Of a stretch of DNA of 64,000 nucleotides, positions 27,801 through 59,600 are shown piece after piece. The notes under the pieces were generated by a model. That model was given only the letters and a program-made list of their open reading frames with translations, did no database searches and was not told the origin of the DNA. The translations under genes and the position numbers were made by a program. Source of the stretch: Botryllus schlosseri (lineage: Eukaryota); contig CM119384.1 of NCBI GenBank assembly GCA_051294905.1, positions 9,424,001 through 9,488,000 of the forward strand, in the 5' to 3' direction. How positions within the stretch are numbered: position 1 is the stretch's first letter; every line of letters starts with the position of its first letter.

Positions 27801-30800
27801 TTTCATTTGGCGATGATGATAATTCCACCTATTGTAGCGGCAGTATTGTTATCTACAGCCTGCTGTTAAGCCGCTTCATTCAACCAATTGACAACTGACA
27901 GCCCTTATAACGCGTTGTCGCATTATGATACAACAGATAACCCCACTTGATTGAAAACTCGGGACACCTCGACTGTAACCATCGCGCCTAACCTGTTCCA
28001 ACTTTATGCGTCGCGATTAGCAGTACATATACTATATAATCACACAATAAGCATGCTTCCGGATCAGCTAACTTTATTATCTCCGCCCCAAGTGCAACTA
28101 TCTCGCGATTTTAGTGCAACAAAAACTTGCCCCAGATATCACACCATCAGTTTCTACTTAGTAAATACTAGTCAGCCCGCAAATATTACCGGATCACAAT
28201 CTGACATATCGACCTTGTCTTAGATATACGGACCGAGGTGTCACATTGATTTTCGTCGGTTGTCTTTTTGTGTTATGTTTTATTCCATTCATCCAGTGTA
28301 CATGCCTCTTATTTACATGTTCTCTAGGTCAGGTTGGGATTCGATGACTATATTCCAAGTCGTTCCGCACCTTCCCCTCTTTTAATTATATCGCAATCTT
28401 GTGGATTGGATGAAAATTTAATAACAAACAGTACCGAACTCTCTGTATTTGACACCGTTACCTAGTTATTCTGCGTTAGTCGCAAATCTGTATTTGTCGA
28501 ATTTGGAATGTGGTCGCCAACTAGAGGGCAGCGATTGACTAAGCGAAATGTCCGATACACCGCCACTTTTCATAGCTACTTTCTCGACTGATTCTAAGTG
28601 ATTTGAATAGCGCGTCTCGGTATTAGGTACATTTTACACGTACATCGGTGCATATCTAACGTATTACTTCTACTTGACTAACTTGAGGATACCATCAACG
28701 GCTATTTCGAACGTTTCTGTGGCTGATATTTCTACTACCAATTATGCCAGGCACCCGACATGGTCCTTCCGTGCTGTCCGCTACATGAATATACGATCGG
28801 TGATAAACATGAATATCACTTCTAAAAACAGTACACATATCATACGTGAATACTGTTGGCTTTCTTTTTCTTCACCACGGCAAAATAGTAAATTCCTCCG
28901 CCAATAAGAGCTGCTGCCGCGACGCTTCCAATCACAATACCAGCAATTGCTCCCGGCGAAAGTCCCTCCTCAGTGACGACCTTCATAGTGACATATCGCA
29001 TATATCAGTAGGTGTTCTTTGATGTGCAGTGTTCGTTATTATTTTTGCCTCACAGACGGATACCTAGTTAAATAGCCATAATGGAGGGTGGGAAATTTCA
29101 AAAAAAAATAGCATGGAGTCTGCTTCTGGAATGGATCAGGTGAGAGCAGGTTATTTTCTTGCCAACGAGTATTAAAAGATTTTTCAGCTTTGGGAATCGA
29201 GATAAGGCCATGCAGATGATGATGATGAGGGTGTTCAGCAACGAAGTTACTATAGGCTTCTATTCGAAATAATTACTCAGGCTATGTCTACTTCTATCTC
29301 TTGCTCTTCTGCTTATGTTATTAAAATTTTGTCAAGTATAAAGTATTTTGCAACATTTCTATCGAATTTCGTCACATAGGCCTGGTAACATGTCTTCCAT
29401 TCCATGCTACGGAAACAGAATATATAATTTCGACAATTAGACGATGTGTCGTTTCACCAAACAAGATCTTAACGTCGGGTCTCGTATTAGGGTAGTGCAA
29501 ATCAACCCGCTGAGATAACAGCGACAGAAGTCAACAGTTTCAGAATGATGACTTCTTAAGAACATTGCTGACTAGCAAAAACCAGTGTCCGGCCCAAGCC
29601 CGTGTATGATCGGGGCAGGGAGGGCATGGAGCGTAAAATTTCAGACAGATATCATTGCGCACCGCCGAGCGGGAAAGCCGCGTAGACCAGTTTTACTTTA
29701 AAATCGTAGGTCTGACTCGGACGTGGATTGACCCCACGACCTACCATTACGAAATGTCGTCGGTTGCGAAAAGTCAACGGAAAAATAGTACGAATGGACT
29801 CACCGTAGCAATAGCGACGTACTCCCCGGGCTCACTACAAATACATCGGATATCGTAGTTTGACTGTAATGAAGCACTGCAACCACCATCACCCCATTCT
29901 CGAGTGGCCTTCTGCCAGCGCTGACAACCTACAGTAGCTTTCTAAAAATAATGAATATAGCCTTGTAATCAGCAGTCAAAATAACGAACTCGGGCATTAT
30001 CGAAGTCTAGTAATAACCACCGATATGACAAGACTGAGACTACACGACTACAAGATGTTTTAGTAATAAGATGGAAATTTTGGAATAATGACGAATTGAC
30101 GGTGTCCATTGTGAAATATTCGACTATGATGATGTCACTATGCCCGATTCCAAAATTGTAGCACTAAAAGCAGTTCGTTTGAAATATTTTCTGGGCTGCT
30201 CGTGGTGTGCTATCAGATTTATCCACACTTTCCACAATGTTACTTGTCACCAGTGTTGGGATCAAGTCACTACCTTCGAGTCACGAGTCATTTCGAGTCA
30301 TTGCCTATTTTGACTCGAGTCAAGTCAAGTCAATCGATTTTCAAAGGTGACTCGAGTCAAGTCAAGTCACTCGATTTTTGGAGGTGACTCGAGTCAAGTC
30401 GAGTCAAGTCAAGTCAAGTCACGAGTCAAGTCACAATTCAAGTCAAGTTGCCTTTTTGAAGTATGGGGCATGATGACGTCATTGCATTTTGATAGCTGTC
30501 TGAAATACAGGGGTCATTGATTTTGAACCGATGTACGAATATAGAGTTAAATATACACGAAAGAAGGCGCTGTATCGCTCACATATGCGTAGAACTGCTA
30601 AACCACAGTTTATAGTTACCAGCCAAACTAGAGAATTGATACGATTTGATAGGATGTGATACATTACGCATTTACAAATCGATATGATGCAATTCGAGCC
30701 TGCGCCAATGGTTGAGGACTGTATAAAATATATTCGAATTCAATTTCATATATTCGAATTCAATTTCAATAACACAAGAGGTTTGGTTAAGGCAAAAACA

Positions 30801-33800: not shown

Positions 33801-36800
33801 AGTCTACCCTATTTCTGCACAAATATTATGATGATATTTTCAAGGAAAGACATTTTGTTGACGCAGGTAATATTTTCACAAGACAGCTGACGGTTGCACG
33901 ATAATTGCGTTAAATTTTGACTAAAACTGGAGGGGTCAGCGGCGGTCCGTGACGGTTCAAAAGGGTCCGCGAAGACAGAAAGGTTGAGAAACATTGGTAT
34001 AAGAAATCAGCATATGTGTTTTCCGACTATAGGTTTTGTGGAATTTTTACATCGTTGAAAATCGGACGACATTCATATGTGAATTGCAGGATATTCTATT
34101 CTCTCACAACCAAAACGTATAAGTATGACCTTCATACTGAACATGTCGTTATCAAAATTGGACATCATTTTAACTATGGACCAACCCTGGAGCATATAAA
34201 GATGTTTGAGATCAACTTACTCATTTGACTGGTCGTTCACTCTCGCTTTGGAACCCGCATCTATCACTTGGAGGAGGTTGTTATAAACGTCAATTGATTG
34301 GCCTGCTTGCTATATAAACAGAAACGGAAATATTATGTAATGTCCTTAAGGCGTATGACGCTAAACCGTGGTTGACAACAGAGGAGGTAAGCTGAAGTAT
34401 TAGTAAAACCATAAATGTCTAGTGTCTAGTCAATTACAGGTACAAGTATAGTAATTTCTAAAACTTTTTCGAGTAGAAGCGACAAATTAAAAGTCTGAAA
34501 GGCACTCAAGTAAGTTATTTCAAAACGTGGATTTGATCGAGGTCATATTAGTTTGACTATGGGCGATTGCTTTCATCAGAGCACGGGGTTGTAATGACTC
34601 GAGTCGCGATTTTTCATTAACTCGAGTCCTTTTCTTAATCACGAAAACGACTTGCTTCGACTTGAGTAACTTGGTGTGTTGACTTGTATTCGAGTCATTG
34701 CGCATGACTCGAGACATTCTATATGACTTGATTCAAGTCTCGGGCTGACTGAAATTACTTGACTCAAGTTAAAACTATAAACGTTAGATTGACAATTTCA
34801 CTAGACACCTTGGGACTTCGTTACTACCCTGTTACAACACCCATTGCGAAAACACATTCATTTTTACTTGAGACTTTTCGTGTGCATGTTATCATGGTAT
34901 TTAGCAGATTCAAAATAAAAACCAAGATGACAAAGTATGTTGAATGTACTGATAAAAGTGATGCAAACTTTTTCCAAAATCTCTTTCCAATTTTCAAAAT
35001 CCAAAATGTAAAAGGTTGATGGTTTTGCCCAAAAACTAATTTAAGTTGAAATCGAAGTAGTCTAAAACCACAGTTTCTTGAGTACTACTTGCTTACCTCC
35101 TAAAAATCAAAAATTTCAATACTGATCGCTAAGGCAAGATTTTGTTGCGGTCGAATCCGTGAAAAGTTACACTTATTTTTGAGGTTGCAGTAAAACGTTG
35201 CATTTATTTTTCCCAAAAGTTGCACTAAAAGTGGCATTTATGGACAAGCTCCTTAAAATTATTAGGTTTTTATATACTAGAATTGATCCGTATCTAAGGC
35301 ACTGTAGCAAAACTCAGTGTTGGCGACAATGACAAAATCAATAGCCTAATAAAATTGACCCAGTGAAAATATAATTTTCGGCGATCTAGCCTGAATGTAC
35401 GTCAAATATTTCCAGTAAAAAGTTGGTTGCATGAAAAATCGAAAAAAGTTGAAAAAAGTTGCGTGAAAAACATGGAGAAAGGTTGCAAAAAGTTCCAATA
35501 TAAGAGTCCTCCAAACAGCTTAAAACAACATATCACATAACTTCTGAGTATTTTGGAAGCTGTCGGAAGCTGTAAAAACAGGTTTCAAAAATTGCAAAAC
35601 TTGCCCTATACTGATCACCTCTAGGAGCAGATGAGAGCAGCACAAACAGCCAGCGTATTGGCCATTGTTGTGTAACCGATTGAACATTCACACTCTCACT
35701 CTAGTGCGCACTTGCTCCTGAGCTGCTCAGACGGCATAGTTGCGTCACAATACCAAACTCCGTTACATTGCAACATTCGAGAAATTTATATTTTCGCAAT
35801 CAGTGCCGCAGTAGCTTTCGATGATTGATACCCGTTTTATCAAATTCAATGCTCGGCAAGCCGGTCTAAAATCACCGTCAAATTGCCATTGACCAAATGG
35901 AAAGTGGGACGTAGACCAATTTTACTGAGCCGTGAGATTTGCTTGTGTCCACGCCATATAGGACACTATGCTGTAACTGCGCAAAGTCATGTCCAGCCCA
36001 CATGTCGGAAGCCTTTCGCATGCAAAGAGCCATGTGAGCTCATTTACTGTGCAATAGAACGACATCAACCGTTGAATCGCTAAAATTATGCCAGAACTAT
36101 TGGTATTTCTTGATTAGAATAGGCTGTAAACTGTAAAAATCGCCTAGTATGCAAAATATGTGAATATGTTGGTAATTATATAATTGATATGTTTTTTTTA
36201 TGAATGGAATGTAATAAGATTGCGAACACCATAATCTCCTTCTCAGCATATACGTCTTACACTCACATTCGCATCTATTGATGAGCTAGTAGATATGAAA
36301 TCCGTGGTGGTTGTGACTGCGTAGTCAACTTGTGTGGGAGTAGCAGTCTCCGGATCCGAAGCAACAATAGCGTATGGTAGTTGTTCTTCAGACGTCAAGT
36401 CCCCAGCCCCAGCGCTACAATCGGTATACTGGAACTCGTCGTAGATTCCAGAAGCCTCATTACAACGTGCTATAGCTATGGGTTGTTGCATGTCTAAAAC
36501 GCATCAACATTATCATTTAAAATTGTGAGTGATATGATTGGGGCTGTTTAGGGGAGAGCCTTCTTCTTTGCCCTACCTTTCGGACCTCCGCGTACATTTT
36601 CAATGTCGAAAACAAATAGACAGCTATATCGGAGCGCCCGGGGACACTAATAGAGCTACGTATACATCGTAACGATTTCCAGTGCAAATATAGGTCCTAT
36701 ATCTATAAAAGACGGGCCTGATCGCCGAGAGCGAAATTCATTGAACAATGATCTGGGGTGGGAAACACTGAGTCCGTCGCAAATGGCTACAAACGCTATC

Positions 36801-39800
36801 AGTTACATCCGGTGGAGAACTCACTTTTACATATGAACAATTGAACATATATTGTCCTGTATACGTTACCTGGAACAACACACGATTCAGTACATTTCTC
36901 GGTCGATTGCGTCCAAGATCCTGCGTCGGCGCCGGAAAACGTCAAATTTCTCAGGTCAGTGTCGGGGACGTACACGTATGTCGAATTACAATCGGCGACG
37001 TCACGGATAAGAGACTCATTTCTGGTCTGCGTCGTCGCACTGCAGGCAACTGTGTCAAGTACATGTCAATTGCAAATGACTTGTTGCATATAGACAGTGA
37101 AATGCCAAATAGGTCTTCTTTACACTCATAGGTATTATAAAGAACAAAGAGAAATGAAATAGCTATACAGTGTACTCAAAGTATACGGTAAAAGCAGTGA
37201 TATCAAATTCTAGCCGCGTCAGTAGAAGTTTGAGTACACATATTAACAACCATCAAACAATCTTGTGACGCACTGCAGCACCCCAAAAGTTGTACAAGTA
37301 AGCGACCATTTATATTAAAATGAAATATCACTAACAAAGCATTATTGATGCTCTAATGTCGGATATACCTACGCTGGGTTGTTAAAACATTGAATATCTC
37401 ATGCAATTTCTATTTCGTTTTGGTGCGGCTCGTCTAAGAAATACAGAGTGGGGCTGAAATAGCGATCATGTAGGTATTTGCAGAGGTGGGCAGTAACAAA
37501 ACACTGCTTGCTTTTGACATTTTGGATTTTGCGAAGTATAGTAAAGTGTTTGTAAAGTAGTTTTTGCCATTGATTTGTGTCACTTTTATGAGTGAAATTA
37601 TCACATTATAGGGGAATATTTATATCTAAACATGATTTGAGCAGAAGTTCACGGCATTACTGAAACTTCTACTTGAGTGGCAAAACTGGCTACTTTGACC
37701 ACCTCTAGATATTTGTGTTGCATTAGACATGCGCATTATGCACTATAATTCGCATTTTTTAAATTCAGTGAAATTTCCGTTAGTTGGGTAGCAGTACCTT
37801 TTGGCCCCCTGACCCTCATTTACTCGTTATACGCGTGCCTCCCCCTAAATTATTCACCAACGTCGGGCCGAAATCGTGTATGGACATATCACTGGTTTGT
37901 TAAACGTGTGTTTGTTAACGTGAATATATAAAACGCGGGTAAGCATTAAAATCCAAATTCGTTTTTGGTCGACTAAACCAAACACGAAACACGACAGTGG
38001 CAGAACGAAGCTTCGGTGCTAGATTACGAAAAATTGTAATTGACATTCGCTACTTGTTCAAGGGGTTATGTGTTCAGGCGATACTGCCACTTCTATAGGA
38101 ACAGTTTGCTAAGAAAAACTATTTACTTTTTGCACATAGAATTTTGATGAGTTGAAGTATTTTTTTGTTTCCATTTTTATGGTTGCTATTGTCATAAGAA
38201 CCGCTTGTACTCTGTGTCACGGCTACTGAATCTATTTTTGAAGATTGTGCCTATTTGTAGCGCTATTTGTCATCTTACGACTTCGAACGTAGCCACATGC
38301 GATTATCTGTTAAAAGTATGCGACCGCATGACAGATCTGCTACAGGGTATCAAATGCTGTGGTGCAGTCACCGAAATACGGAGCCATTACACGCACCTTT
38401 GTCTCCACAAAAGTCGCCTGCGTAGCCTGGTGAGCACTCGCAATCGTAATTGCTGGCGGTTCCAATGCATATCGCGCCATTTTGGCAATCATTATCCAGA
38501 CAGTTATCTGCAGAAATTAGCAAATAATTACATGGATGTTGTGACTTTGTTAAGATTTTGGCTCATCGTCCATGACGCGTCCTGAACACTGATTCTCAGC
38601 CGAATATAAAACCGGATATTGAACATTTTTTGCACCCAAAACCAGAGGCTGTGTGTACCTGTTTGACAAGAATCACCAGAGAAGCCCGGGAGGCAGATGC
38701 ATATTGAATTGCCTTCAACCACGGAGCACGTTCCGCCATTTACACATTCTTTCGTACACTCTGAAAAGAAAAAGAAAAGTCGATAACGGTATGCGGTGCT
38801 CCAGCGAATCAACGGAATGTCGTATCCCACCTTCTGTCCCGCCATCTCCGCTGAACGTGGTTTCTACAAAACAAGAAATACTTCAACAAATCAGTTGATG
38901 CGATCCAACTATATGGAACTTGGTATTATGGTTAAAGGGTGTATCGGTTTGGATGATCTCAAATTACTTCGGTCAAACGAGCAGATGTTTGAAAGCATGA
39001 GATTTGTATCTGACGGAGTCGTCGATTAAATGAATCCTCGCATCTGTAAATGGTTCGTTTTAATATCTATATGCTGGCATATCGGTAGGCAACATAGCAT
39101 AGCCCAATTCCCAATCTTTTTCGACTCATTGCCCCCTTATCAATCTCGGCACAAATTTTATCCCCCCTCCCCATATTTACGGATCCGAAAAAGATGACAT
39201 CTAAACGGGGGAGGTTCATTCACCTAACTCTAATCGCTGGTGAAATGACTTTAAAAAGGTCATTTCCGAGTAAGTACTCGTAAAAACGGTGTCTGCGACT
39301 ACTTTCCGTTGAGTTGACCTTTTTTGCGTCATAATTAGCCGTCATCACATGCATTTTTCCGCTTTGTCAATTAAATGTATCTCACTGAACGTTATAGCAT
39401 TTTAGCCCCTACCGCCCCTTTCGTATTTCCGCTCCCTTGCATCTCAAAATCACCCATTGGGGAGGGGGGGCGATATCGCCAACGTTCGAACCATTAATAT
39501 AGCCTGTAATACCCTATATAGTGACCATACTACAGGGGTTGGCATATTTTGAGCATGACGGTCGTATTCAGAATATGAATCGGTTAGTATAGACTAAGTT
39601 ACAATTATATACCAAGACATAAAGGCGCAGTGTGAGTGTGCAGTGGAATGATGAGCGCAGTGTGTAAAACGGCAGCAACGGTAGCTGGTTCGAGCCTCGA
39701 ATCCTCCAAGATAGGTTGTGGAAGCTACCGAGGTCTTGTTTATATATATCGTCTGCTATCGGCGTAACATACTTTATGTCCAGGTTGTGTCGTCTAAAGC

Positions 39801-42800
39801 GTGAAAATGCCCAGCGCCGGGATGCCGGTTCATAAGTTGCGCTCCCATTAGGCTGCACACGTGCACAGTGAAAACTATTAGACTAAAGCATCCAAACGGT
39901 TTGATACGATATTAGGTTGACGTTCTTCCATAACTGCTAATACGGTTGACTCATTTCTGTACGTTATGCATAGTTTTTAAAAACATTTTCTGTATACATA
40001 TATATTTATTATTGGGTGGTCCCACATTATTATTATGACACCACGCTCCAATCAATCGTGCGAGGCGCGGAAAAAAATTTCAAGAAAAGAAAAATTTGCC
40101 CTAGAAGACTCTATTTTATGTTGGTTTATGAAATAATTTTGGATCGCCTACGAGCTTTGTAAATTTTTAAAACTTCTGTTTCACTTTTTGCAAAAACGTG
40201 GTCTCAATATGTCGTTTGCGTGAAATCATTTGGCGTGCCTTGAAAAATCATCTCGCGGGCCACAAATGGCACGCGTGCCGAGGTTGCCGGCCCCTGTTAT
40301 AGGCCTACCGTTGTAGAATCATAAACGAGCAAATGAAATAAATATACGTCGACATGGTGTTACACTCAACGTACCGCAATATCCCAACTTAAACAAAACT
40401 GCTTGGGCATTGGTTCTTATTATATCAAGAAGCGCATGATGAAAAATTGTGATGTAGACAACATTGTTTGAATGAAGCAACACGGTGTGACACCAGCAGT
40501 GTACGCTAGGATTGTTTTAAAAAAAAACTTTTTTTTTTGAAATTTCATCGGCTTAGTTGTCAAATCGTCAGGTTACATAAAAAAAACGTTGCGCACCAAA
40601 TTGGATTCAATTCCAATCAGTAGTAGCCGAGGTCAGTCAAATTGAAATTTCGGTCATTTTCTAAATAATAGTAGGCTATTTGCGGCGACCAATTTCGTCA
40701 TACCGACATGACCAAAAATCGTGTTCCAGGTATGCCTGAAGTGGCAGGGATGTCTTTTTCACTTGTTTTGATGCTGGCAATGGCCTACGATGGATTTTGG
40801 ATGAAGACATTGTCAGTAAACGAAAAAAAGATATGACACTAATTGGCTGGAAATTAGTCCACTTCATTGAATTGACACGTTAAAACGATGTTGAGATAAT
40901 TTTCAAATAGAGTACTTTACAAACTGAAATTAACCACCACGAAAAGGAAATAAACTGATAATAAGCATACGGGTAAATATATTTCTCAAGTGCTAGTCAA
41001 TATATATATTCTTTGTCGGTCCAATATATAGATTTCTTCACGATACAATTTGATATTATATGATATCCTATCATTTGCTCTGCAGCACTCCTATAGTACT
41101 CTCACAGGCGAATTATAAGACTAATGGGCATCGTGACCAATGTTCCCTCTAAGCTGCGCACGTGCGCAAATGCGCAGTGCTGACACGGTCTCTGCGCACA
41201 GAAAATCCAATTTGCGCACAAGAAATCTGAAGTGATGACCTTTTATTTAGTAGTTACGCACTGTTGTCCAAGGTTCTGCGCAGTGAGTTTGTGAGTGTGC
41301 GCAGACTCGTCAAAAATTAGAGGGAACATTGTCGAGACATTCCTATCAAAAGTTAATCGCCCTCTCTTCATGTCATCCTCCACATTCGGTGAATACCATC
41401 TAATTGTATATCGTGGTAAAACACCAATGCTTTTTATTACTCTATGACAAGAAGGGGGGGGGGATCACACAAGAAGGGGGTTCAGGTGATATTGAAAGAC
41501 CAGAAAATGGCTAATGTGCGTTATCAGCTCAGTGAGTTACCATTTAGTTTCCCTGAAGCTCGCAAAGTTTCGAGCACATAAAAAGCTCTAGTTAGTCTAG
41601 TATCAACGCTTATGTGAAGTACCAAAAATGCTTTTTCAACTCATAAATACTATTCATTGGCATAGCCATTTTCAATTGCAATCAGCACCATTTTTAACGC
41701 CCTGTATCAGTCAATGTCAGGCTGCAGAGAAATATTCGAACACTGAGCTGCTGAGGAATGCAACTGATGTCTCTGTGGATGATATAAAACTTCGAATCAA
41801 GGCAGAGAGACATCGGCATGCCCTGTATAACTGGGATAGATTTCCGACAAAAAATACTTTTAGATATGACTATCACTTGAAAATATATTTACCCGTATTT
41901 TACCTGCTTGTCAGTTCATTTCCTTTCCTTTTCGTGGTCGTTAATTTCAGTGTGTAAAGTACTCTAATCGAAAATTATCTCACCATCCTTTTAACGTGGC
42001 CATTTCAATGAAGTGGGCTAATTTCCAGCTAATCCGTGTCGTGCCTTTTTTCGTTTATAGGCGATGTCTTCAACCAAACTCCACCATAGGCCCATATCAA
42101 GATTAAAACAAATGGAAAAGACACCCCTGCCTTTTCAGGCATACCTGGAACACGATTTTTGGTCATGATCGTGTGACGAAATTTCAAAAATGACCGAAAT
42201 TTCAATTTGACTGACCTCGGCTTCTACAGGTTGGAATTGAGTCAAATTTGGTGTGCAACGTTTTTTTAGGTAACCTAACTAAGCCGACAAAATTTGAAAA
42301 AAAAAGTTTTTTAACACCCCTACTGTACGCATAATTTCATTGTTGCCAGTCAATAACTGCTGCTGCTGCTAGTTGGTAAGGACAAACACTTAGTACCCGA
42401 GAATCTAGGAAAGTATATTTCGTTGCATTAAATTTTTTTTAAATTATTTCCACCATAATTAGTATAATGTAACTACTGGAATTCTTCATAGGTCCAGATT
42501 TCGTTAAAATAAAGTTTTTTCACGTGAAAATTTGTCAGTAGTATAATTGTAACATTACGTGGGAAAACACCTAATTTACATACATGTGTTCAAAATTTGG
42601 TCAAAATTAATTTTTTAAGGTAAAAAGTCAGAGTCCACTTTTCTAGATAACACACGCCATGGACTGCTTGATTACGATATGATAAGTAAATGCCAGATTG
42701 CGAAACATCAGTTTCAAACGTTATGATGGGCCATATAAACTGTGATGAAATATTTCATATGGGCGACAATGCGGTGTGGACGGAACCACACAACCCGATA

Positions 42801-44579
42801 CCGAAATTACATTCACCGGTACTTTCGTGAAATCATGTTGGGCACTCCATATCCACTGTGCGCGAAGCGCGACGAAAATTCTGGGCTCTACTCAATATTT
42901 ATGAAAATTAAATATTGATACTCCTTGAAAACAGCCCCAAAATTCCTCTGGCTATCATCCTGATTGGAGGATTAAACTACTTCTATTTGACAAATTGAAA
43001 ATAGCTAAAAGTAAGTAAGTAGATCACAAAATATTACGAAGTAGAAGTAGCGCGAAATTAGATATACTTGAGTAAGTACCTAAGTAGCGGAAAACTACTT
43101 GAGTACTTTAAAAAAGTCGAAGTACTTCGTTACTGACCACCTCTGAATAAATCATTGTTGTCTCAAACATTTCACATCAGTAGCTTTATTTAGCAGCATT
43201 GATTAGCTACAAATATGCTCACTGCCTATCATTATAGGATGCTTGGTTTCAAGTGGTGTTTCGAATTATAGCCTTTAAATCCCATGGTCGGGTTTTCTTT
43301 TGTTAGGTCAAGATTAGCTTGGGTTCTCTTTTAATGACTGGCCATCATGGCACTATAGCGGATTCGATTCTCGCCGCATGTGTTCCACTCTAATATGGTC
43401 ATGCCACCAACGCGGATTGTTACTACACAACGTATGGCGTTATCGACAAAGTATAGTCAGATAATCCCCCCTCCCATATTCTCGCGTGGTCCCCAAGGTC
43501 AAGTAAAACGCATGAGACAATCAGACTTGCATCTGCCAAAGGTGTATGAGACTTACCCATTCCCGCTGTAGCATTCTGCGCATCTGAAAATATTTCGTAA
43601 ACGTTGTCGTAGGAAGCAGTAACTGTATCTGTATGTATATGTATTAATGGAGCTTATCGCCTTTTTAGGACTTGTGCTCCACGACACGAATTTCATAATG
43701 TTCAAAGGTCTTCGCTTTTGTATTATTGAGAACGTCTTCCAGTCTCTCTCGCAGTCATTCTTCATTCTCTCTCGCTCCCATGCGTCCGCATCGAGATCTC
43801 TGCTGCCGACTTTTGCACGGCTCACTTTCAGTCTGGGCTTTTCAATGCACTACCGTAGTAGTGAGGTCGGCGATGAGGAGCCCAGAGAAACCTCCGACAC
43901 ATAGACGTTGGTCAGAACCGGGATTCGAACCCAAGTCCATTGAGGAAGCAGTAACTAATCCATACTAGATTTGGGAATATGGAGACTTACTGTCTCTGTA
44001 GGAAGTTCGTTCCCATCATTCCGGGAATATTCCAGAAAGCGAGGAGGGTTAAAACCTCGTTAAAATCGTATTCAATATACTCACGGAACAATCAAATTTG
44101 TATAACAGCTAAAGCTTTGGTAAAAGTCTATGAGACTTACCCGTTACAGCTGTAGTATTCTGCGCACCTGTAAATAATTCGTAGACATTTACGTACAGAG
44201 CAGTCACTAATCTATACAGTATTGGAATATAGAGATCTCCTATATATGTAGGAAGTTCGTTCGCAGTATTCTGGACACATTCCAGAAAGCAAGGATGGTT
44301 AAAACCTCGCAGAAATAATATGCAACATACAGTATTCATTTCAATCAATAAGTCGATCTTTCCACATCGCTTCTCGTCATACTTCTGTGAACTTACTGGC
44401 TTAATAGTTTGTTGCTGCAGCTGTCAATTTTTTCTTTGAGCAATATCCGTTAATATTCGTTTACCATTTTGAAATGAGATAGGTACAGTGTGGGCTTAAA
44501 TCAAATTCAATTAATCAAGTTTTTTTTGTTTGATATATTACACGCAGTTTCAATAGAGTGTGGCGGTTGTTATTTTCAT

Positions 44580-44617
<38 letters not shown>

Positions 44618-47600: not shown

Positions 47601-50600
47601 AGCGACAATGCGACATGAATGCCTCGTATATCGATATAGGAATCCAGCACGCTCACAGGACGAGGTAAGCATCTAGTGCCATAAATGATGGTACACCGAA
47701 CTTAACTGACGTAATCCATAGTCCGGCGACACGACATACACTAGGAATGAATAACCATACATTGTAACAGAATAAATGGCTGTACTTGTACGCGTATATC
47801 GCGAAAACCTCGAAATGCATCACATGACAATAAATTGATAAATTTATCATTTCTGCTGTACATGGGCGAAAACCCGTTTTATACTATACGCAAAAACGCT
47901 GGAAGACTCACTTGATGTGGCGAGCGTAGCAAAAAGAAATACTGCCAGGGAAGTCACCTGCATCTTCATAATTACTTCTCTTTCAATCTTACGACTCCAG
48001 TGACACAATTATAAAATATAAGATATCAGATACAATATATAGCTGTAAGAATAGGATTTATGAAGGCATATTGGGATGGTCTCAAATATATCTTTATACT
48101 TCCATCCCGTGATGGAATATGTAGACCGCTGTGTATCCGGAGGACCAAGGCTGAACTATCTTGACACATTTAAAAAGTTCATGGTTAGCATTCGGTCACC
48201 TATAGATAAAATTATCCACTCTCGCTTTCGGCTACTTCATTAGCTCCCGCATCCGACATACCTCAGTTCACCGACCTCTATTTATGACACTTAGTCCCCG
48301 GTTGTATCCTTCAAAACTGTCCATCGAATTCGAGTAAGGTTAAATCGACCAATATTTATGTATGAATGAGATCCTTCTGATCTAAATATTTGATCTCTAT
48401 TTTAGCGAGGATGTAATTTATATTTCCCCGCCGATTTACCATCTGTTGCATATGATTCTACACGCACTGGTGATATTTGCAGGGCTAACATTTCTATCTT
48501 CGGCTGACATTGACACTGGTGGATTCATTTCAGTGCGGCTACATTATTTTTATCACGTCACCTCGGAACATTATCATCAATACTATCATCTTTCTATGAC
48601 ATTTTACCTCCTGCATTCTTTTCGAAGACAGGACGACATATCAATTTTGACACACCCTACTCCAGAGATCCAGACCGCCATGTGCATCAAATTATAAAAC
48701 AAGTGGCGAATATATTGCTTGATGTCATACCTTGTGTTTGTGATCACCTATGGATACGCATGACGTTGCCGTAGCAACGATGCGCTCCCGTTAGACATGT
48801 CGCAACTTTCCTATCCCGATGGGTGTTGCTAATAATTGACTAACTGATTGGAGTACTTTATGCTTCATATATTGGAGTGTCATAAAATATAGCCCACTAG
48901 ATACACACGATGGGTGTACTCAATTTGAAATTTGTATTGCGGTGATAATTTGTCCATACGGTTCTCATCTCAAGATATGTATTGGATGATTTATATCAAT
49001 ATTGTTGAAATACGGCTTTTATCAAATTCGTTGCAAGGGGCCCCGTTTAGGTCAGATAAATATAGATTGGACTTGAGTATTTCTCGTCATTGAACATAAT
49101 AGTCCTAAATATCCATGGAGATAACCTGACGCCATAAGAAATTTTGTTACGTATGTGTCGATAACAATATATGTATTGTCTAGGTGCCCACTGACAGCCG
49201 TGGACAGTGTTCAAAGCTCGCACGCATATCCTCCACATGCATCATTGTTGGTTGGAAGTAGTTGGTTATTTTGTATAGAGAAGCCTCATCCTTATATATG
49301 TCAAACCGCCATAAATTTCTATTTTTATGGAATCTTCTTGTTTGATAACCTCTGCTCGTGAAGATAAAATTTAATGCGGATGTACCGCGTCGTCGTTCAC
49401 TGGTTATTGATTTTAGTGGCTAGTAGCTACTACCCGCTACCCATAGTTGTCACTTGTCATATTCAAATTTTAATAAATCGGTAATTCAGTACCATCAATA
49501 TGATGCTGTTGAATCTCGCATTTAATATTGCATTGTAGGGATGGTGTGAACCCCTGAAAGGTTCACGTTCGTGTGAATGTGAACCTATGACGTCACGTGA
49601 CGTCGTATTGCTAATTCCAACCCTGCATTTCAGTGAAGAGATATATCAATGTTTGTACGTACACGATATACCTAGCGACTACTCAGGTCACGCTATGCCA
49701 CTATAGAGACTGTAGACATGCCATAATGCTGAAGTAGGCTACATCATTAGACCAGTGGTTCTCAACAGGAGTGCCATTTACGTTTCGCATGTGTGTGTGT
49801 TGCGAGAGATTTCTTCGAAATTTTGAAATTATACGGAAAATAATTCTAGTCTATAGCAAACGATTAATCTAACTCGGGGTCAATGAGAAGTTTGTAGATT
49901 TGACAAATCAAAATTGCTGTCATGCAGGCAACCAATATCCCCCGCTAATTCGATTTACCCGACCATATCGCATGCTCTGAAGGCTGAAATAAGTTTTGCA
50001 CAATGCGTTGAATATTAATCGCAGAGAAGAGCCTGTATGACGATGCAATTTTCTCATCGTCTTCCTAATCACAAGCGAGAAATGAACTCCTTCGGGAGTG
50101 ATGTTCATTGTTCATGTTCATTGTTCACCTTTACAAATTCGAATTATAAGCATAACCAATTAACCATCCATCGAATTATAAGCATAACCAATTAACCATC
50201 CATTCATTCATCCATTCATCCATTCATCCATCCATTCGAATTATAAGCATAACCAATTAACCATCCATCCATATTGTGATTGTTAGGTAGTATGCCGGCA
50301 CTGCCGGTCTAATATAGGCTTGTATCGCAACGTTATGTTACCGGTGACGAATTTAAGAATTGAGAACTAAAGTTGCTCAAATTAGATCATTTTACAAATT
50401 TCTCCGCCGCAAAGGCTATTATCGCGGTTTGTTGAAACTATAATTTATCTGCGGGTGGCTGCCAGTAGAACAATCGAGGTATGGCTATCCCCACGCGTTC
50501 TACACGATCTGCCTGGAAATGCATCTGGCATCCATGTAGGTAGGCCTATGCCTCTTCGATGCGATGGTTAATTACATCGACAATGCGGAAGTGTGGAGGA

Positions 50601-53600
50601 AGTGTCAAACAAATCTTATGGCGCAGTCCGAAGTTTCTGTGACGCCGTGAATCGTTAGTAAATCAAAGTGACCCAACCCCCTTTCTATACTTTCTTCTGA
50701 ATATGTCCTGCTTGTTGTAATCACGAAGGATCGATATCCTGGTCCGAGGAATATGACGATCGTTTTTCAGGGCTTATCAAGCTATATGAGGGACGGTTTC
50801 CTTACAAATGTTTACTTTTAGAAATATTGAAATGGATTAGTCCATGTTGAAAGAAAGGAAGTCGAACGGTTTTTATCATTGTAGTGAACGAAGAAAATAT
50901 ATTTTAGAAGTGGAGGTCCTTCGGAAAAGAAAGCCGGAGAGCTCGCTTATATATTGCGACGGTTTGCGACATCACTTGATGTAATTACGACTGTACCAGA
51001 TTTCCTTTTCTATCATGCAAAATTGTCAAATGAAGCTATGGGTAAAAGCAAATTGAAAGGCCCTTTTTAAAAACCATATACACACTCTAATTGTCTGGCA
51101 AAGCGCCGAGCTATTTCGAAACCACAATGTGCTAGTGTGCCGCGAACTATTTTTCTCTTTGGAAGGGTGCCGGGAGTACAAAATGGTTGAGAACCACTGC
51201 ATTACACCCATGTTACCATGTACCAGTTCACACGCTCAAGTGACAAAAACCTATATTCAGCAAAATCCAATCTTGACCAACAGCGCAACTCTTTGGCTGT
51301 TGCGATGATGAATGTATGGAGTAGCGCCCTCCCTTCCGAAACTGTACTACGCGTTTAAGTTTGCTACTTTTCAAAAGTAAAGTAGACAAACCAGATCAGG
51401 CTTCGCAGGCTCGGTTTTACTAGCGTCTTAGGCCAATTATGCCATATGCCTGGCCGTTATCTCAGGCACGAAGCCAGCCGAAAAATGAGGGGGGGTTGAA
51501 ATAAATGGATGGGTTTCGATTGTTATCGAATTTACTAATATAGCATCAATTCATTAGGGTTAAGTATATGCATAAATAACGATTATACAACATACTCGTG
51601 TTATACGCGTATGATAAGCTTGTCCACGTGTCCGGAAGTGCTGTTAATTAGCGACTGCCTGATCTGTCGTGAACAGTTAATATACACGCACTAATCAACG
51701 CGTCGAACAATTAAAGACGCCCGCTTTTCAATGCGTTTTACGTAGCCTAGGCGACGATTCGCGCAAGTCAAAATGTACGAGTTGTTATGGAATATGTGCC
51801 ATAATGACGCCGATTGCAGGTGATTCAAACCTTACTTCTTTTATAACTCAAGGCTTGACACACAGCTTCTGATTGTTATGTTCAAGAATTAGCGATCGAT
51901 TCCACATGTGCGCACACGTCGCACATGTTTGCGGCCATCCGATGTCATTCAGTTTCGAGATGTCACTCTTTAATCACAATCGCTAATCAGCATATACCTA
52001 ACTGCATTTTATCCAAGCCATCGGGAAATAGGAGCCAAAGCAAGGTAGACCCGAGACGCGGTATGGTTAGGCTAGCGATATCTTTCGTACTAGGCCTATT
52101 GCAGATGAGATTATGTAGGCAAGAGATGATATCGTGCGCACCAAACCAATGCAGATGCGATTATGTAGGCCAGCAATGATATCGTGCGCACCGGGCCTAT
52201 TGCAGATGCGATAATTAAAACCAGCGGAACTGGGCTTGTTGGAGACGTGATAGATCAGGCTAGCAACGATTGCCGAGCGCGCGCCAATGAATGACCTAAT
52301 TTCGCAATCATCTCAGCGGGAGATCGTGTCGCATTACATTGTGCAGTTCACTGCGCACGGACGAATCTGGCAAATAATTGGCAACGCGCCTTCCGTTAAT
52401 TGGCCGCGCGCAACACTATAATACCACTTATTGAATTGTAACCGAGTATTAGCGTCAGAACGGTCATTTGAAAAGGACGGGGTTTCACGTGGAGGGAGTT
52501 TCGCGCTTCCAAACCCCCACTTGGCTACGCGCCTGGTTATGTTTCTTTAGCTTCATATGACTACATTATTCGTCGTGATTATAAATATTTTTTCTGTTAT
52601 GACTGGCAACTAAAATATATACGGAAGGCTAAACTCAGTCAATTAATGATCTTAAGTTTCCGATCTTACATACGGCACATACATAACTGTTCATCTGACT
52701 TGAACTGCACTTATATGCAGAAATATAAATATATATATTATGTTTATATGACAGCTTCATTATTACAATCAAATTAGTATCTCAATAAATACCCGTAGTT
52801 GTGTCGACGAAAGGGTCCGAACGAGCAATTGTTGTAAGGACATAATTAGCACATAACGCAGCTGGGGTAGTCACGGAAGCATCTGCGAACAAAATAAGAT
52901 ATGGTGTCGCTTATTTACTAGTTTTCGTACTCCACATAGGAGACTATAAATCATTTGTTTTCAACGTTCCTATGGTGAGCGTGCATTACTTAAAACATGA
53001 AAGCTCAGGACCTTCGCCCAGACCTATAGTTCTGGATAACCACTAAAAGCTGATTACTAGAAAAGGTCAGAACCTTCGGGGTTACCACCTTACGACCGCC
53101 CTCCTACGGATTGAAAACCACTGTAATAAACCCTAAAAGCCTGAAGCTGTGTGTTCCACTAGTGTGAATGTAATCAATTTCTATTCGCGACTGTTGCTAC
53201 GTACTAGTATACTCTGTATACTCACCTACAATGTAGACTTGCAATAGCTTTTCATCTGAAAGAGACCTGCAGTAGTAATCTCCAGAATCTTGCACAGTCG
53301 CGAAGTTGTAAAAGTACAATCGACCATCCAGTTGTTCAACAGGCTTCCCCGATGGAAACTCAGGTACCGTTGTTCCGCCATTCCACCACGTTAAATTTTG
53401 GTTTGAAACCGACCGACAGATCACATTGGCGCCAGTGCCAAGAGGAATAACTATACATCCACCTTCCGCATCACCGTAAAACGAAAGGTCGTCTGTCGGG
53501 AATACATTGTCGTTTGTTAGTTGCATTAATATAAATATAATATTTCAAGATGAAACAACCCGAACTCAGTTCGATACAAATCTGCTGAACGTTCTATTCG

Positions 53601-57537: not shown

Positions 57538-59600
57538 CAGTGGTTCCCAACCTTTTATTTCCCGTGGCCCCCTTGCGCAGGCTTCTAGCACTGGTGGCTC
57601 CCTGCTTACCACTAAAAAAAGATTTGTTTGAACGTGCTTGCGTTTATTATTTTAATGCCATCTTTGATGGTGTTCAAAAGCAAACAAAACAAAACGAAAC
57701 AAAGTCAACGAAGTTTAATTGACCATCAATGCGAGATTTGCTCTTGGGATCGTCTGACGAGGCTCTTTATATTTGGCTCAGTCTTTGACACAGCAAGACG
57801 AATGTCACTGCCAACATCGAGACGGTTTCTAGATTTTGTTTTGATGGTAGCCAGATCAGAAAACCCAGATTCACAAAGATAGGTTGTGGCAAATTGAACG
57901 AGCAATACAGAAGCTTTCTTGCTGAGTAGCGGATATGAATCGTAAAGAGACATCCAGAAACTGGCAAAAGCTTCTCTGTTTTCAAAAACCAATTTTAGCG
58001 CATTTGAAACCTGTAGTTCTGCCAGTTCCCCTACCTCTTCTTCAATAGGGTCAATTTCGGTGTTGAACGGGTCTTTGTACCACGGAATATGCACACGTTT
58101 TTCTGGAAAATAAGATTCAAACTCAGCAGAGACGATTCTCAGGTGCTCAGAGATGCAAGTTTGGATGCCCACGGGTAACTCAACTTTTTTAATTTCCAGG
58201 TATTGGCTTAACAGAGGGAACGAGGAAGTTGAGCGTACCTTGATTCGTTCTCGCCAAACTCCAATTCGAGCGCATATTCCAACTAGTTTATCTTGAACGT
58301 CACCGACTGTTACATCACGGCCTTGTCGGGAAAGGTTCATTTCATTAAAGCACCCAAATACATCTGCCAAATACGCCAGTATCATGACAAACTCTTCATT
58401 TTGAAAGTGGGCGTGGAAATTGTTTTTGTTTTCTCGCAGAAAGATTTCCACCTCAACACGGAGTTCATATAGCCGAGAGAGACATTTCCCTCTGGATAGC
58501 CATCGAACATTTCTATAAAATAGGAGCCGAACATGTTCAGCTCCCATTTCTTTGGTAAGAATTTGAAAGAGTCTGTGGCTTTGGGCCCTCGCACGTATGA
58601 AGTTAATCACTTTTACCGCGTCGTCCATAACTTTCATCAAACTGGAAGGTAGAGTTTTTGATGCAAGAGCGTACCGATGTAATGAGCAGTGCGAGGACGT
58701 CACGTGGGGCCATTCTTTCTTCACAAGCGTGACGAACCCCCCTTTGACACCAACCATCGCTGGAGCACCATCCGTACATATATGTTTGAAATTTTGCCAG
58801 CCGAGTCCATTCGCTTCGAAAAACGAGTTCACAATAGTCTTCACATCTACTGCGGTGATGGTGCCTGGCATGGTATTGCAAAACAAGAATTCTTCTTTTA
58901 TCTTTCCCTCTTTTTCATAGCGAGCAAAGGCAATCAAGTGATTTTCCAGAGCGCAATCAGTAGATTCGTCCAGCTGAAGGCTAGCCTGAATCTTGCTTTG
59001 CTTGATTTCAGAGCAAACTTGCTGACATACAGTAACAGTCATATCGTCAATGCGTCGGCGAATCGTATTATTTGAAAGAGAAATCTGCTGAATCTTTTTC
59101 TTTTTTGCAGGTCCTATCAGTAGTTCTACCATTTTCTCCGCACATGGCTTGATAAGGTCCTCGGCTATAGTGTGCGGCTTCTTGCACCTTGCAATCCGAT
59201 ATGCCACTTCATAGCTGCATTGAAGAGCTATGGATTTTCCTTCGCCAGGAATCCGAAATGGTTTAGTGTTGCTTCACGGTCGAATCGTACTCGCTTAGCA
59301 GCCAAAGCATCGTTGCCAACGTCATTTCTCCGCGGATGATTCTTGTCGTGGTGGTTTCTGAGTTTGGATGGACGTAATGACGCATTGGACATAACATACG
59401 AGCAAGGCATACATTGCGCGCATTCTAGGCAATCTCGGAGAACTTTTGTAAAGCCGATAAGTAACATAACTTTCTTTCCATTTTCGAACTTTAGGCATTT
59501 TGAATTTAAAATTTACGGTAATTTCTTTTTGAGTCTAAAATAGGCTAGGTTTGACCGTTGGTTCTCTATACTTGATATGAAAAGATTCAATTCCGTTATT
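57538..59600 (-). mobile_element. Formerly autonomous Buster-type hAT element; one TIR present, the other not found
   Basis: CAGTGGTTCCCAACC begins at 57538, preceded by ctcTAgag; no matching TIR or TSD seen beyond 59500, so the right boundary is approximate. Confidence 0.8.
57726..59498 (-). pseudogene. hAT (Buster/Charlie-type, ZBED5/SCAND3-like) transposase; 493-codon DDE core intact, BED-finger N-terminus broken by two frameshifts
   Basis: SLQLDESTD, ICTDGAPAMVG, HCSLHRYALA, VRWLSRGK, TTYLCESGFS in ORF 57726-59207. C2H2 BED (CMPC...PSKLRNHHDKNH) lies in another frame (59228-59467) and MPKVRKWKESYVTY starts at 59498 in a further shifted position. Confidence 0.9.

What the first reader, a model, noticed from the sequence alone, without database searches (positions are those of the whole stretch)
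43548..44340. Tandemly duplicated 27-nt microexons, each adding one N-glycosylation sequon to the receptor stalk
Seen: two phase 1-1 microexons, (G)AQNTTAVT and (D)AQNATAGM, both with gtaagtctca donors. They sit in a duplicated intronic unit of about 250 bp (shared gcagt-actaat, gtaggaagttcgttc and ttaaaacctcg blocks). The flanks have diverged visibly but exon length, splice sites and the N-x-T sequon are kept. Inference: a growing glycosylated spacer between Ig and EGF whose length could be tuned by exon skipping without frameshift.
Basis: partly seen in the sequence, partly recalled or inferred. Interest (0 to 1): 0.7.

Follow-up and report, generated by a model that had tools for sequence, protein, structure and literature searches.

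The report
Duplicated 27-base microexons, both spliced
Two neighbouring 27-base exons made by a local 250-base duplication are both spliced into the mRNA of an EGF-domain surface protein, each adding nine amino acids with a sugar-attachment motif; this is real, but it is an ordinary tandem exon duplication.

Summary
On the minus strand lie two 27-nt, phase 1-1 exons, at 44141-44167 ((x)AQNTTAVT) and 43557-43583 ((D)AQNATAGM). Each has an AG acceptor and the donor gtaagtctca. They sit in a ~250-bp tandem duplication (208 aligned columns, 80% identity) found nowhere else in the 495-Mb genome. The downstream copy was later split by a 318-bp SINE-like insertion with a 14-nt target-site duplication.

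RNA data from three studies show GT..AG joints linking upstream microexon, downstream microexon, a further 33-nt microexon (38831-38863, not in the finding), EGF exon 1 and EGF exon 2. Both copies therefore sit together in one mRNA. The genome holds no retrocopy.

- No skipping joint was listed.
- The exons are as diverged as their introns (81.5% against 80%, p = 1), and 4 of 5 exon changes alter the amino acid, so there is no sign of selection on the peptide or the sequon.
- The exon upstream of the first microexon was not determined.
- A signal-peptide-like first exon (47912-47969) lies between the Ig exon and the microexons. The peptide may therefore be the N-terminal tail of the mature protein rather than an Ig-EGF stalk.

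This is a new member of a known kind; interest is low to moderate.

The parts
44141..44167 (-). Upstream 27-nt microexon, phase 1-1, encoding (x)AQNTTAVT with sequon N-T-T
   Evidence: Sequence. The donor is used: joint 43583->44141, CT..AC on the + strand, in X1 (2 contigs), X3 (1 contig) and X17 (3 reads). The 5' boundary is inferred from the AG, the phase, homology with the other copy, and zero RNA depth at 44195-44390 in X3 and X17.
43557..43583 (-). Downstream 27-nt microexon, phase 1-1, encoding (D)AQNATAGM with sequon N-A-T
   Evidence: Both boundaries are shown by joints 43583->44141 and 38863->43557 (X1 2 contigs, X3 1 contig, X17 9 reads from 7 starts).
44122..44330 (-). Copy 1 of the duplicated unit (aligned part): about 160 nt of upstream intron, the exon, and about 19 nt past the donor; period 250
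43957..44080 (-). Copy 2 of the duplicated unit, upstream-intron part
   Evidence: Family D1, 79% identity, spacing 250; alignment.
43538..43624 (-). Copy 2 of the duplicated unit: the exon and the flanks next to it
   Evidence: Family D2, 80% identity, spacing 584; alignment.
43625..43942 (-). SINE-like dispersed repeat inserted into copy 2's intron, 42 nt upstream of the downstream microexon. It is flanked by a 14-nt target-site duplication (43611-43624 and 43943-43956) and ends in a TACA-type tail
   Evidence: 2047 first-look candidates in the genome; the 40 scored copies are 86-94% identical, nearly all from element base 1 to 295. Exact 14-nt direct repeat, family D5. Very high RNA depth. 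No tRNA or Rfam match.
38831..38863 (-). Third microexon, 33 nt, phase 1-1, encoding (E)TTFSGDGGTE; unrelated in sequence to the 27-nt pair
   Evidence: Joints 38863->43557 and 38760->38831. No similarity to the unit.
38659..38760 (-). EGF exon 1, phase 1-1
   Evidence: Pfam hEGF/EGF_2/EGF hits, below the curated cut-offs. Joints 38760->38831 and 38507->38659.
38397..38507 (-). EGF exon 2, phase 1-1
   Evidence: Pfam EGF, E = 4.8e-07, above the cut-off. Joint 38507->38659.
47912..47969 (-). Candidate first coding exon: MKMQVTSLAVFLFATLATS plus one base, donor gtgagt, phase 1. Signal-peptide-like; a possible partner of the upstream microexon
   Evidence: Sequence. It is the only ATG + hydrophobic core + GTRAGT phase-1 feature on either strand of the window. 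Splicing it in keeps the frame. No RNA evidence was obtained.
53226..53492 (-).
   Evidence: Weak Pfam Ig hits, E about 0.01. 67% identical ORF in a related species' genomic contig. Phase compatible.

Best explanation
A local tandem duplication of about 250 bp copied one symmetric (phase 1-1) 27-nt microexon together with about 160 nt of its upstream intron and its donor site. The exon is a multiple of three and symmetric in phase, and each copy kept its own AG acceptor and strong GTAAGT donor. The spliceosome therefore uses both, and the mRNA gains a second nine-residue module without a frameshift. Together with an unrelated 33-nt microexon, the two modules form a 28-residue segment rich in Thr, Ala and Gly, AQNTTAVT-D-AQNATAGM-E-TTFSGDGGTE. 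It has two N-x-T sequons and lies directly N-terminal to two EGF domains of a predicted surface protein. Later a SINE-like element inserted into the intron between the copies, lengthening it from about 225 to 557 nt. Its target-site duplication left the 41 nt next to the acceptor intact, and splicing continued. Shown here: the duplication, the insertion, the use of both exons in one transcript, and the open frame into the EGF exons. Inferred: that the segment is extracellular, flexible and N-glycosylated, and that the second copy persists because it is harmless, or at most mildly useful as extra linker and glycan, rather than being a regulated length switch.
For: Duplication: (208 columns, 80.3% identity, period 250). 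It is unique to this locus. SINE insertion with a 14-nt target-site duplication. Splicing of both exons in series, all joints GT..AG on the minus strand, in runs from three studies including raw transcriptomic reads. No retrocopy that could mimic the joints. The frame stays open through to the EGF exons only in phase 1. EGF identity of the next exons. Divergence looks neutral: exon 22/27 against intron 145/181 identical, Fisher p = 1.0, K2P 0.22 against 0.23, 4 non-synonymous changes to 1 synonymous (codons read).
Against: The 27-nt exons give almost no power to detect selection, so a functional role for the sequons is not excluded. The 12 bases after each donor are identical in both copies (12/12), which could reflect constraint on microexon recognition; at 80% identity the chance is about 0.07, and runs of similar length occur elsewhere in the unit. 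The 5' partner of the upstream microexon was not seen. Contigs cannot show rare isoforms, and only about 6% of the one informative raw-read run was read, so exon skipping is not excluded. Glycosylation and membrane topology are predictions only.
Confidence: 0.8

Rival explanations
1. One reading: the microexons are cassette modules of a glycosylated spacer between an Ig domain and the EGF domains. Spacer length and glycan number are tuned by in-frame exon skipping, and the array is expanding.
For: Every exon from the Ig exon to EGF exon 2 is phase 1-1, so any subset can be skipped in frame. Both copies keep N-x-T. The Ig exon is a conserved coding exon on the same strand with a phase-1 donor.
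Against: No skipping joint is among the best-supported joints in four runs, and the assembled major form holds both exons. There are only two copies and no decayed third one. Exon divergence equals intron divergence. A signal-peptide-like first exon lies between the Ig exon and the microexons, so the Ig exon may belong to another transcript or gene.
Confidence: 0.12
2. The two copies are mutually exclusive exons, as in many tandem exon duplications, giving two alternative nine-residue variants.
For: Same length, same phase, adjacent and homologous, which is the usual anatomy of mutually exclusive pairs (PMC9741552).
Against: The joint 43583->44141 joins one directly to the other in contigs from two studies and in raw reads from a third.
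Confidence: 0.02
3. The 'exons' are chance AG...GT open frames in an intronic repeat, and the spliced forms come from a processed pseudogene or an assembly artefact.
For: Exon and intron are equally diverged. Runs X1 and X3 are only guessed to be RNA.
Against: Four consecutive introns are removed exactly at GT..AG in independent runs, including a run recorded as transcriptomic raw reads. Neither spliced junction sequence exists in the genome, even allowing 3 mismatches.
Confidence: 0.02

Closest known systems
Tandem exon duplication in animal genes (Kondrashov & Koonin 2001 and Letunic et al. 2002, from my own knowledge; reviewed in PMC9741552)
   Same: Adjacent homologous exons of equal length and phase arise from a local duplication that also copies intron sequence. 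Symmetric phase makes the duplication frame-neutral.
   Different: The cases studied most are mutually exclusive substitutions. Here both copies are included in series, so the protein gains an internal repeat and does not get two alternatives. The exons are also unusually small (27 nt).
CD45/PTPRC variable exons 4-6 (A, B, C) and CD44 variant exons
   Same: In-frame cassette exons encode unstructured, heavily glycosylated extracellular segments near the N-terminus (CD45, PMC8380896) or in the stem (CD44, own knowledge). The number included sets length and glycan load.
   Different: Those exons are larger, mainly O-glycosylated, and demonstrably alternatively spliced. Here no skipping was seen, and glycosylation is only predicted from two N-x-T sequons and seven Thr residues. 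No homology is implied.
Regulated (neural, SRRM3/4-dependent) microexons
   Same: Length within the usual limit of 30 nt or less (PMC7821500), in frame, with a strong donor, and UGC 35 nt upstream of each acceptor (read).
   Different: No evidence of tissue-specific or switch-like inclusion. The exons lie in an extracellular linker, not on a surface of a cytoplasmic protein. No deep conservation was shown.

Membership tests
Microexon (30 nt or less, spliced) | Exon length of at most 30 nt | tested here: met
   27 nt each. Both boundaries of the downstream copy and the donor of the upstream copy are fixed by joints. The upstream copy's acceptor is inferred.
Microexon (30 nt or less, spliced) | Present in mature RNA with canonical splice sites | tested here: met
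   CT..AC joints on the + strand in X1, X3 and X17. No genomic retrocopy.
Tandem exon duplication | Adjacent exons of the same length and phase, with similarity that extends into flanking intron | tested here: met
   27/27 nt, phase 1-1. 208 aligned columns at 80.3% identity including 181 intronic ones. Period 250.
Mutually exclusive exon pair | The two exons are never in the same transcript | tested here: not met
   They are joined directly to each other (joint 43583->44141) in three runs.
   No skipping joint is among the 15 joints shown; 23 weaker ones were not shown. Contigs drop rare forms, and X17 gave only 3-9 junction reads.
N-glycosylation site | Sequon N-x-S/T with x not Pro | tested here: met
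   N-T-T and N-A-T, each followed by Ala.
N-glycosylation site | Segment is translocated into the ER lumen (signal peptide, extracellular context) | tested here: inconclusive
   It lies next to EGF exons. A signal-peptide-like exon and a downstream transmembrane-like ORF exist, but they are not shown to be on the same mRNA.
N-glycosylation site | Glycan actually attached | not testable with these tools
   Needs glycoproteomics or a PNGase F shift.
SRRM3/4 (eMIC)-dependent neural microexon | Neural-specific inclusion and a UGC motif close upstream of the acceptor | not tested
   UGC lies at -35 in both copies. Tissue specificity could not be examined.

The most novel reading that the evidence does not exclude
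The pair is the visible part of an evolving microexon array. Its copy number varies among individuals or sister species, and its members are skipped in a tissue- or stage-specific way. That would set how many N-glycans decorate the N-terminal tail (or Ig-EGF linker) of an EGF/GPS-like surface protein, an invertebrate analogue of CD45/CD44 isoform control built from 27-nt units. Both Logan contigs end within 3 nt of the upstream microexon's 5' edge. That leaves room for a branch point there, though the offsets fit nearby SNPs better.
Probability: 0.1. Interest if true: 0.5.

Novelty: new member of a known kind. Interest (0 to 1): 0.27.

Why it matters
It is a clean, RNA-verified example of how a symmetric microexon can be duplicated with its splice signals and be accepted at once by the spliceosome. 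The result is a short internal repeat in an extracellular linker. The pair survived a SINE insertion 42 nt from one acceptor. Three microexons in a row (27, 27 and 33 nt) are easily missed by annotation pipelines, so the locus is a useful test case for microexon-aware gene prediction in this genome. It does not open a new question. No regulated or selected function is shown, and the phenomenon is well known.

Tried and rejected
1. I looked for a full-length or cDNA-derived protein of this gene, to read the exon upstream of the first microexon. A phmmer search of 1.84 billion representatives with exon 36246-36503 found only two short ORF fragments. A word-index search with the EGF1 region found nothing. 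A search with the Ig exon found one 96-aa ORF from a related species' genomic contig. The look-up of encoding contigs returned no DNA for either fragment.

2. I tried to infer the upstream partner from the 'side' values. I rejected this. 'Side' is counted per aligned block, and both microexons are 27 nt, so the value 27 says nothing about what precedes the upstream one.

3. I considered the contig ends near the upstream microexon as evidence of alternative 5' exons. One ends 24 nt inside it and the other 3 nt beyond it. Neither offset is what a branch exactly at the junction would give, so they do not support that idea.

4. Third or decayed copies of the unit were sought in 38.3-53.2 kb and genome-wide. 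None was found.

5. A retrocopy was sought. None was found.

6. tRNA and Rfam searches of the SINE and the region gave nothing meaningful.

7. Pfam on the long accidental ORFs that run through each microexon into the intron gave no family.

8. I searched for a signal-peptide exon upstream of the Ig exon, in the window plus 10 kb beyond it. There was no convincing candidate.

9. I made rough splice-site lists for downstream exons but did not carry them to a full gene model. The downstream architecture (GPS-like motif, transmembrane segment) rests on weak Pfam hits only.

Full report
**What is in the sequence**

The feature lies on the minus strand.
- The upstream candidate exon is 44141-44167. 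It is preceded by ..aattatttacag and followed by gtaagtctcata.
- The downstream one is 43557-43583. It is preceded by ..aaatattttcag and followed by the same twelve bases.
- In phase 1 they read (x)AQNTTAVT and (D)AQNATAGM. One of the other two frames hits a stop and the other breaks the frame of the EGF exons.

The duplication is real.
- The repeat finder reports a 107-nt pair spaced 250 nt apart (79% identity) and an 87-nt pair spaced 584 nt apart (80%).
- The two spacings differ because a 318-bp element (43625-43942) sits inside the downstream copy. It is flanked by an exact 14-nt direct repeat (43611-43624 and 43943-43956).
- With the element and one repeat copy removed, the two units align over 208 ungapped columns at 80.3% identity. 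Shuffled units score 12-17, against 52-207 for the real copies.
- The unit occurs only here in the 495-Mb assembly. The pattern 'exon core plus GTAAGT' has exactly these two matches, even with three mismatches allowed.
- No third or decayed copy exists between 38.3 and 53.2 kb.

**The insertion**

The 318-bp element is a dispersed repeat. There are 2047 first-look candidates, and the 40 scored copies are 86-94% identical. Nearly all of them align from the element's first base to base 295, after which a TACA-type tail follows. ARAGORN and Rfam recognise nothing in it, so I call it SINE-like.

It inserted 42 nt upstream of the downstream microexon. The target-site duplication left the 41 nt next to the acceptor as they were. 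The intron between the two microexons grew from about 225 to 557 nt.

The two units differ by K2P 0.23, whereas this element differs from its relatives by 6-10%. The duplication is therefore older than the insertion, assuming roughly neutral rates.

**Are they exons?**

Yes. I laid two sets of Logan contigs (X1, X3) and two raw RNA-seq runs (X17, X21) on 38395-44390. Four joints appear, each with CT..AC ends on the + strand, which is GT..AG on the minus strand.

| Joint (+ strand) | What it joins | Support |
|---|---|---|
| 43583->44141 | upstream microexon to downstream microexon | X1 two contigs, X3 one contig, X17 three reads |
| 38863->43557 | downstream microexon to a 33-nt exon at 38831-38863 | X1 two contigs, X3 one contig, X17 nine reads from seven starts |
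| 38760->38831 | 33-nt exon to EGF exon 1 | X1, X3, X17 |
| 38507->38659 | EGF exon 1 to EGF exon 2 | X1, X3 |

- X1, X3 and X17 come from three different studies. X21 has no reads on the gene.
- X1 and X3 are only guessed to be RNA, so I checked for a processed copy. Neither spliced junction sequence exists in the genome with up to three mismatches. The joined form is therefore RNA.
- Both boundaries of the downstream microexon are fixed directly, as is the donor of the upstream one.
- The acceptor of the upstream one is inferred. The grounds are its AG, its phase, its homology with the other copy, and zero RNA depth at 44195-44390 in X3 and X17.
- The contigs run a further 1083 nt (X1) and 1160 nt (X3) past EGF exon 2, so this is a long multi-exon mRNA.

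**The encoded segment**

The spliced series gives AQNTTAVT-D-AQNATAGM-E-TTFSGDGGTE, followed directly by the first cysteine-rich EGF exon. The segment is 28 residues long, with 7 Thr, 5 Ala, 4 Gly and two N-x-T sequons.

The 33-nt exon is a third microexon that the finding does not mention. It is also phase 1-1, lies only 70 nt from EGF exon 1, and has no sequence relation to the 27-nt pair.

The two following exons are EGF domains. For exon 2, Pfam EGF has E = 4.8e-07, above the cut-off. Exon 1 has several EGF-type hits below the cut-offs.

**What lies upstream**

Two candidates are phase-compatible.
- **The Ig-like exon, 53226-53492.** It ends ..GTAG|gtgagt in phase 1. It is a conserved coding exon, 67% identical to an ORF in a related species' genomic contig. 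Its Pfam Ig hits are weak.
- **An exon at 47912-47969, between the Ig exon and the microexons.** It reads MKMQVTSLAVFLFATLATS plus one base, followed by gtgagt, also in phase 1. It is the only ATG + hydrophobic core + GTRAGT phase-1 feature on either strand of the 64-kb window. Joined to the upstream microexon it gives ..ATS-S-AQNTT.., which is a typical signal peptide followed by the mature N-terminus.

I found no signal-peptide exon upstream of the Ig exon, either in the window or in 10 kb beyond it.

My estimate is about 0.6 that the signal-like exon is joined to the microexons, and about 0.4 that the Ig exon is in at least some transcripts. The two are not exclusive. 'Stalk between Ig and EGF' is therefore unproven. 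An N-terminal glycosylated tail is at least as likely.

**Selection**

It is equal.
- Identity is 22/27 in the exon against 145/181 in the introns (Fisher p = 1.0). K2P is 0.22 against 0.23.
- Of the five exon differences, four change the amino acid (G/D, T/A, V/G, T/M) and one is silent.
- At 80% identity, keeping the sequon, the exon length and the splice dinucleotides is each expected by chance with a probability of roughly 0.4-0.6 (my estimate). None of these is evidence of constraint.
- The only hint is the 12/12 identity just after the donors. That could reflect the need for a strong donor at a microexon, but equally long identical runs occur elsewhere in the unit.
- With 27 nt the test has little power, so function is not excluded either.

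**Skipping**

None of the 15 best-supported joints skips either microexon, and the assembled major form has both. Contigs drop rare forms, 23 weaker joints were not shown, and X17 gave only 3-9 junction reads from about 6% of the run. Minor or tissue-specific skipping cannot be ruled out, but nothing supports it. Mutual exclusion is ruled out, because the two exons are joined to each other.

**Comparison with what is known**

This is a tandem exon duplication, a common route of protein elongation and of alternative splicing in animals (PMC9741552; earlier work from my own knowledge). It differs from the well-studied cases in that both copies are included in series, so neither substitutes for the other, and in the small size of the exon, which is within the usual microexon limit of 30 nt or less (PMC7821500).

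The defining feature of those systems, regulated skipping, was not seen here.

**Verdict**

The mechanism is an ordinary frame-neutral tandem duplication of a symmetric microexon, later hit by a SINE. The claims of selection, tuning, growth and an Ig-EGF position are not supported by present evidence. It is a new member of a known kind.

Earlier scan notes gave the GPS-like motif at 29804-29941 (s1-301060). I could only partly check it (Pfam GPS E = 0.068), and it does not bear on the microexons.

Noticed in passing
window 38831-38863 (-): An RNA-supported 33-nt phase 1-1 microexon, (E)TTFSGDGGTE, lies only 70 nt upstream of EGF exon 1. It is not in the finding and is unrelated to the 27-nt pair. 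The linker is therefore built from three consecutive microexons.
   Followed up: yes
window 47912-47969 (-): Signal-peptide-like first coding exon (MKMQVTSLAVFLFATLATS, donor gtgagt in phase 1), with a TATAAAG about 125 nt upstream of the ATG. It is the only such feature in the window. It may be the true start of the EGF gene, or an alternative promoter downstream of the Ig exon.
   Followed up: partly
window 43625-43942 (-): A SINE-like element with a 14-nt target-site duplication and more than 2000 genome candidates. Its core (about 43795-43994) has RNA depth above 1000 in raw RNA-seq. Many reads diverge at 43815, 43860-43867, 43905 and 43931, which suggests several related repeat families share a central core.
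   Followed up: partly
window 44141-44170, contig ends in runs X1 and X3: Both long cDNA contigs stop within 3 nt of the 5' edge of the upstream microexon, one 24 nt inside it and one 3 nt beyond it, despite k-mer depths of 172 and 76. The cause is unknown. Nearby SNP bubbles fit the offsets better than alternative 5' exons do.
   Followed up: partly
window 38741-38760: X17 reads carry a variant of the first bases of EGF exon 1 with two differences from the assembly. X1 has a second contig over the microexons. Two haplotypes seem to be expressed, both holding both microexons.
   Followed up: no
window 57729-59273 (-): An uninterrupted 515-aa ORF with a hAT C-terminal dimerisation domain (Pfam E = 5.7e-06). 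It is a possibly intact hAT transposase upstream of the Ig exon. The adjacent ORF at 59231-59512 looks like a zinc-finger part but has no Pfam hit.
   Followed up: partly
window 40395-43194: The 4.7-kb intron between the downstream microexon and the 33-nt exon holds several stretches with very high depth in all RNA and contig runs (for example 40395-40594, 40995-41394 and 42195-43194). These are presumably further dispersed repeats.
   Followed up: no
window 44583-44615: A perfect (TC)16.5 microsatellite lies in the intron upstream of the duplicated unit.
   Followed up: no
window 36246-36503 (-) and 53226-53492 (-): Both exons have ORF counterparts (76% and 67% identity) in genomic contigs of one other sequencing sample, apparently a related species. 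Exon 36246-36503 is single-copy in this genome.
   Followed up: partly
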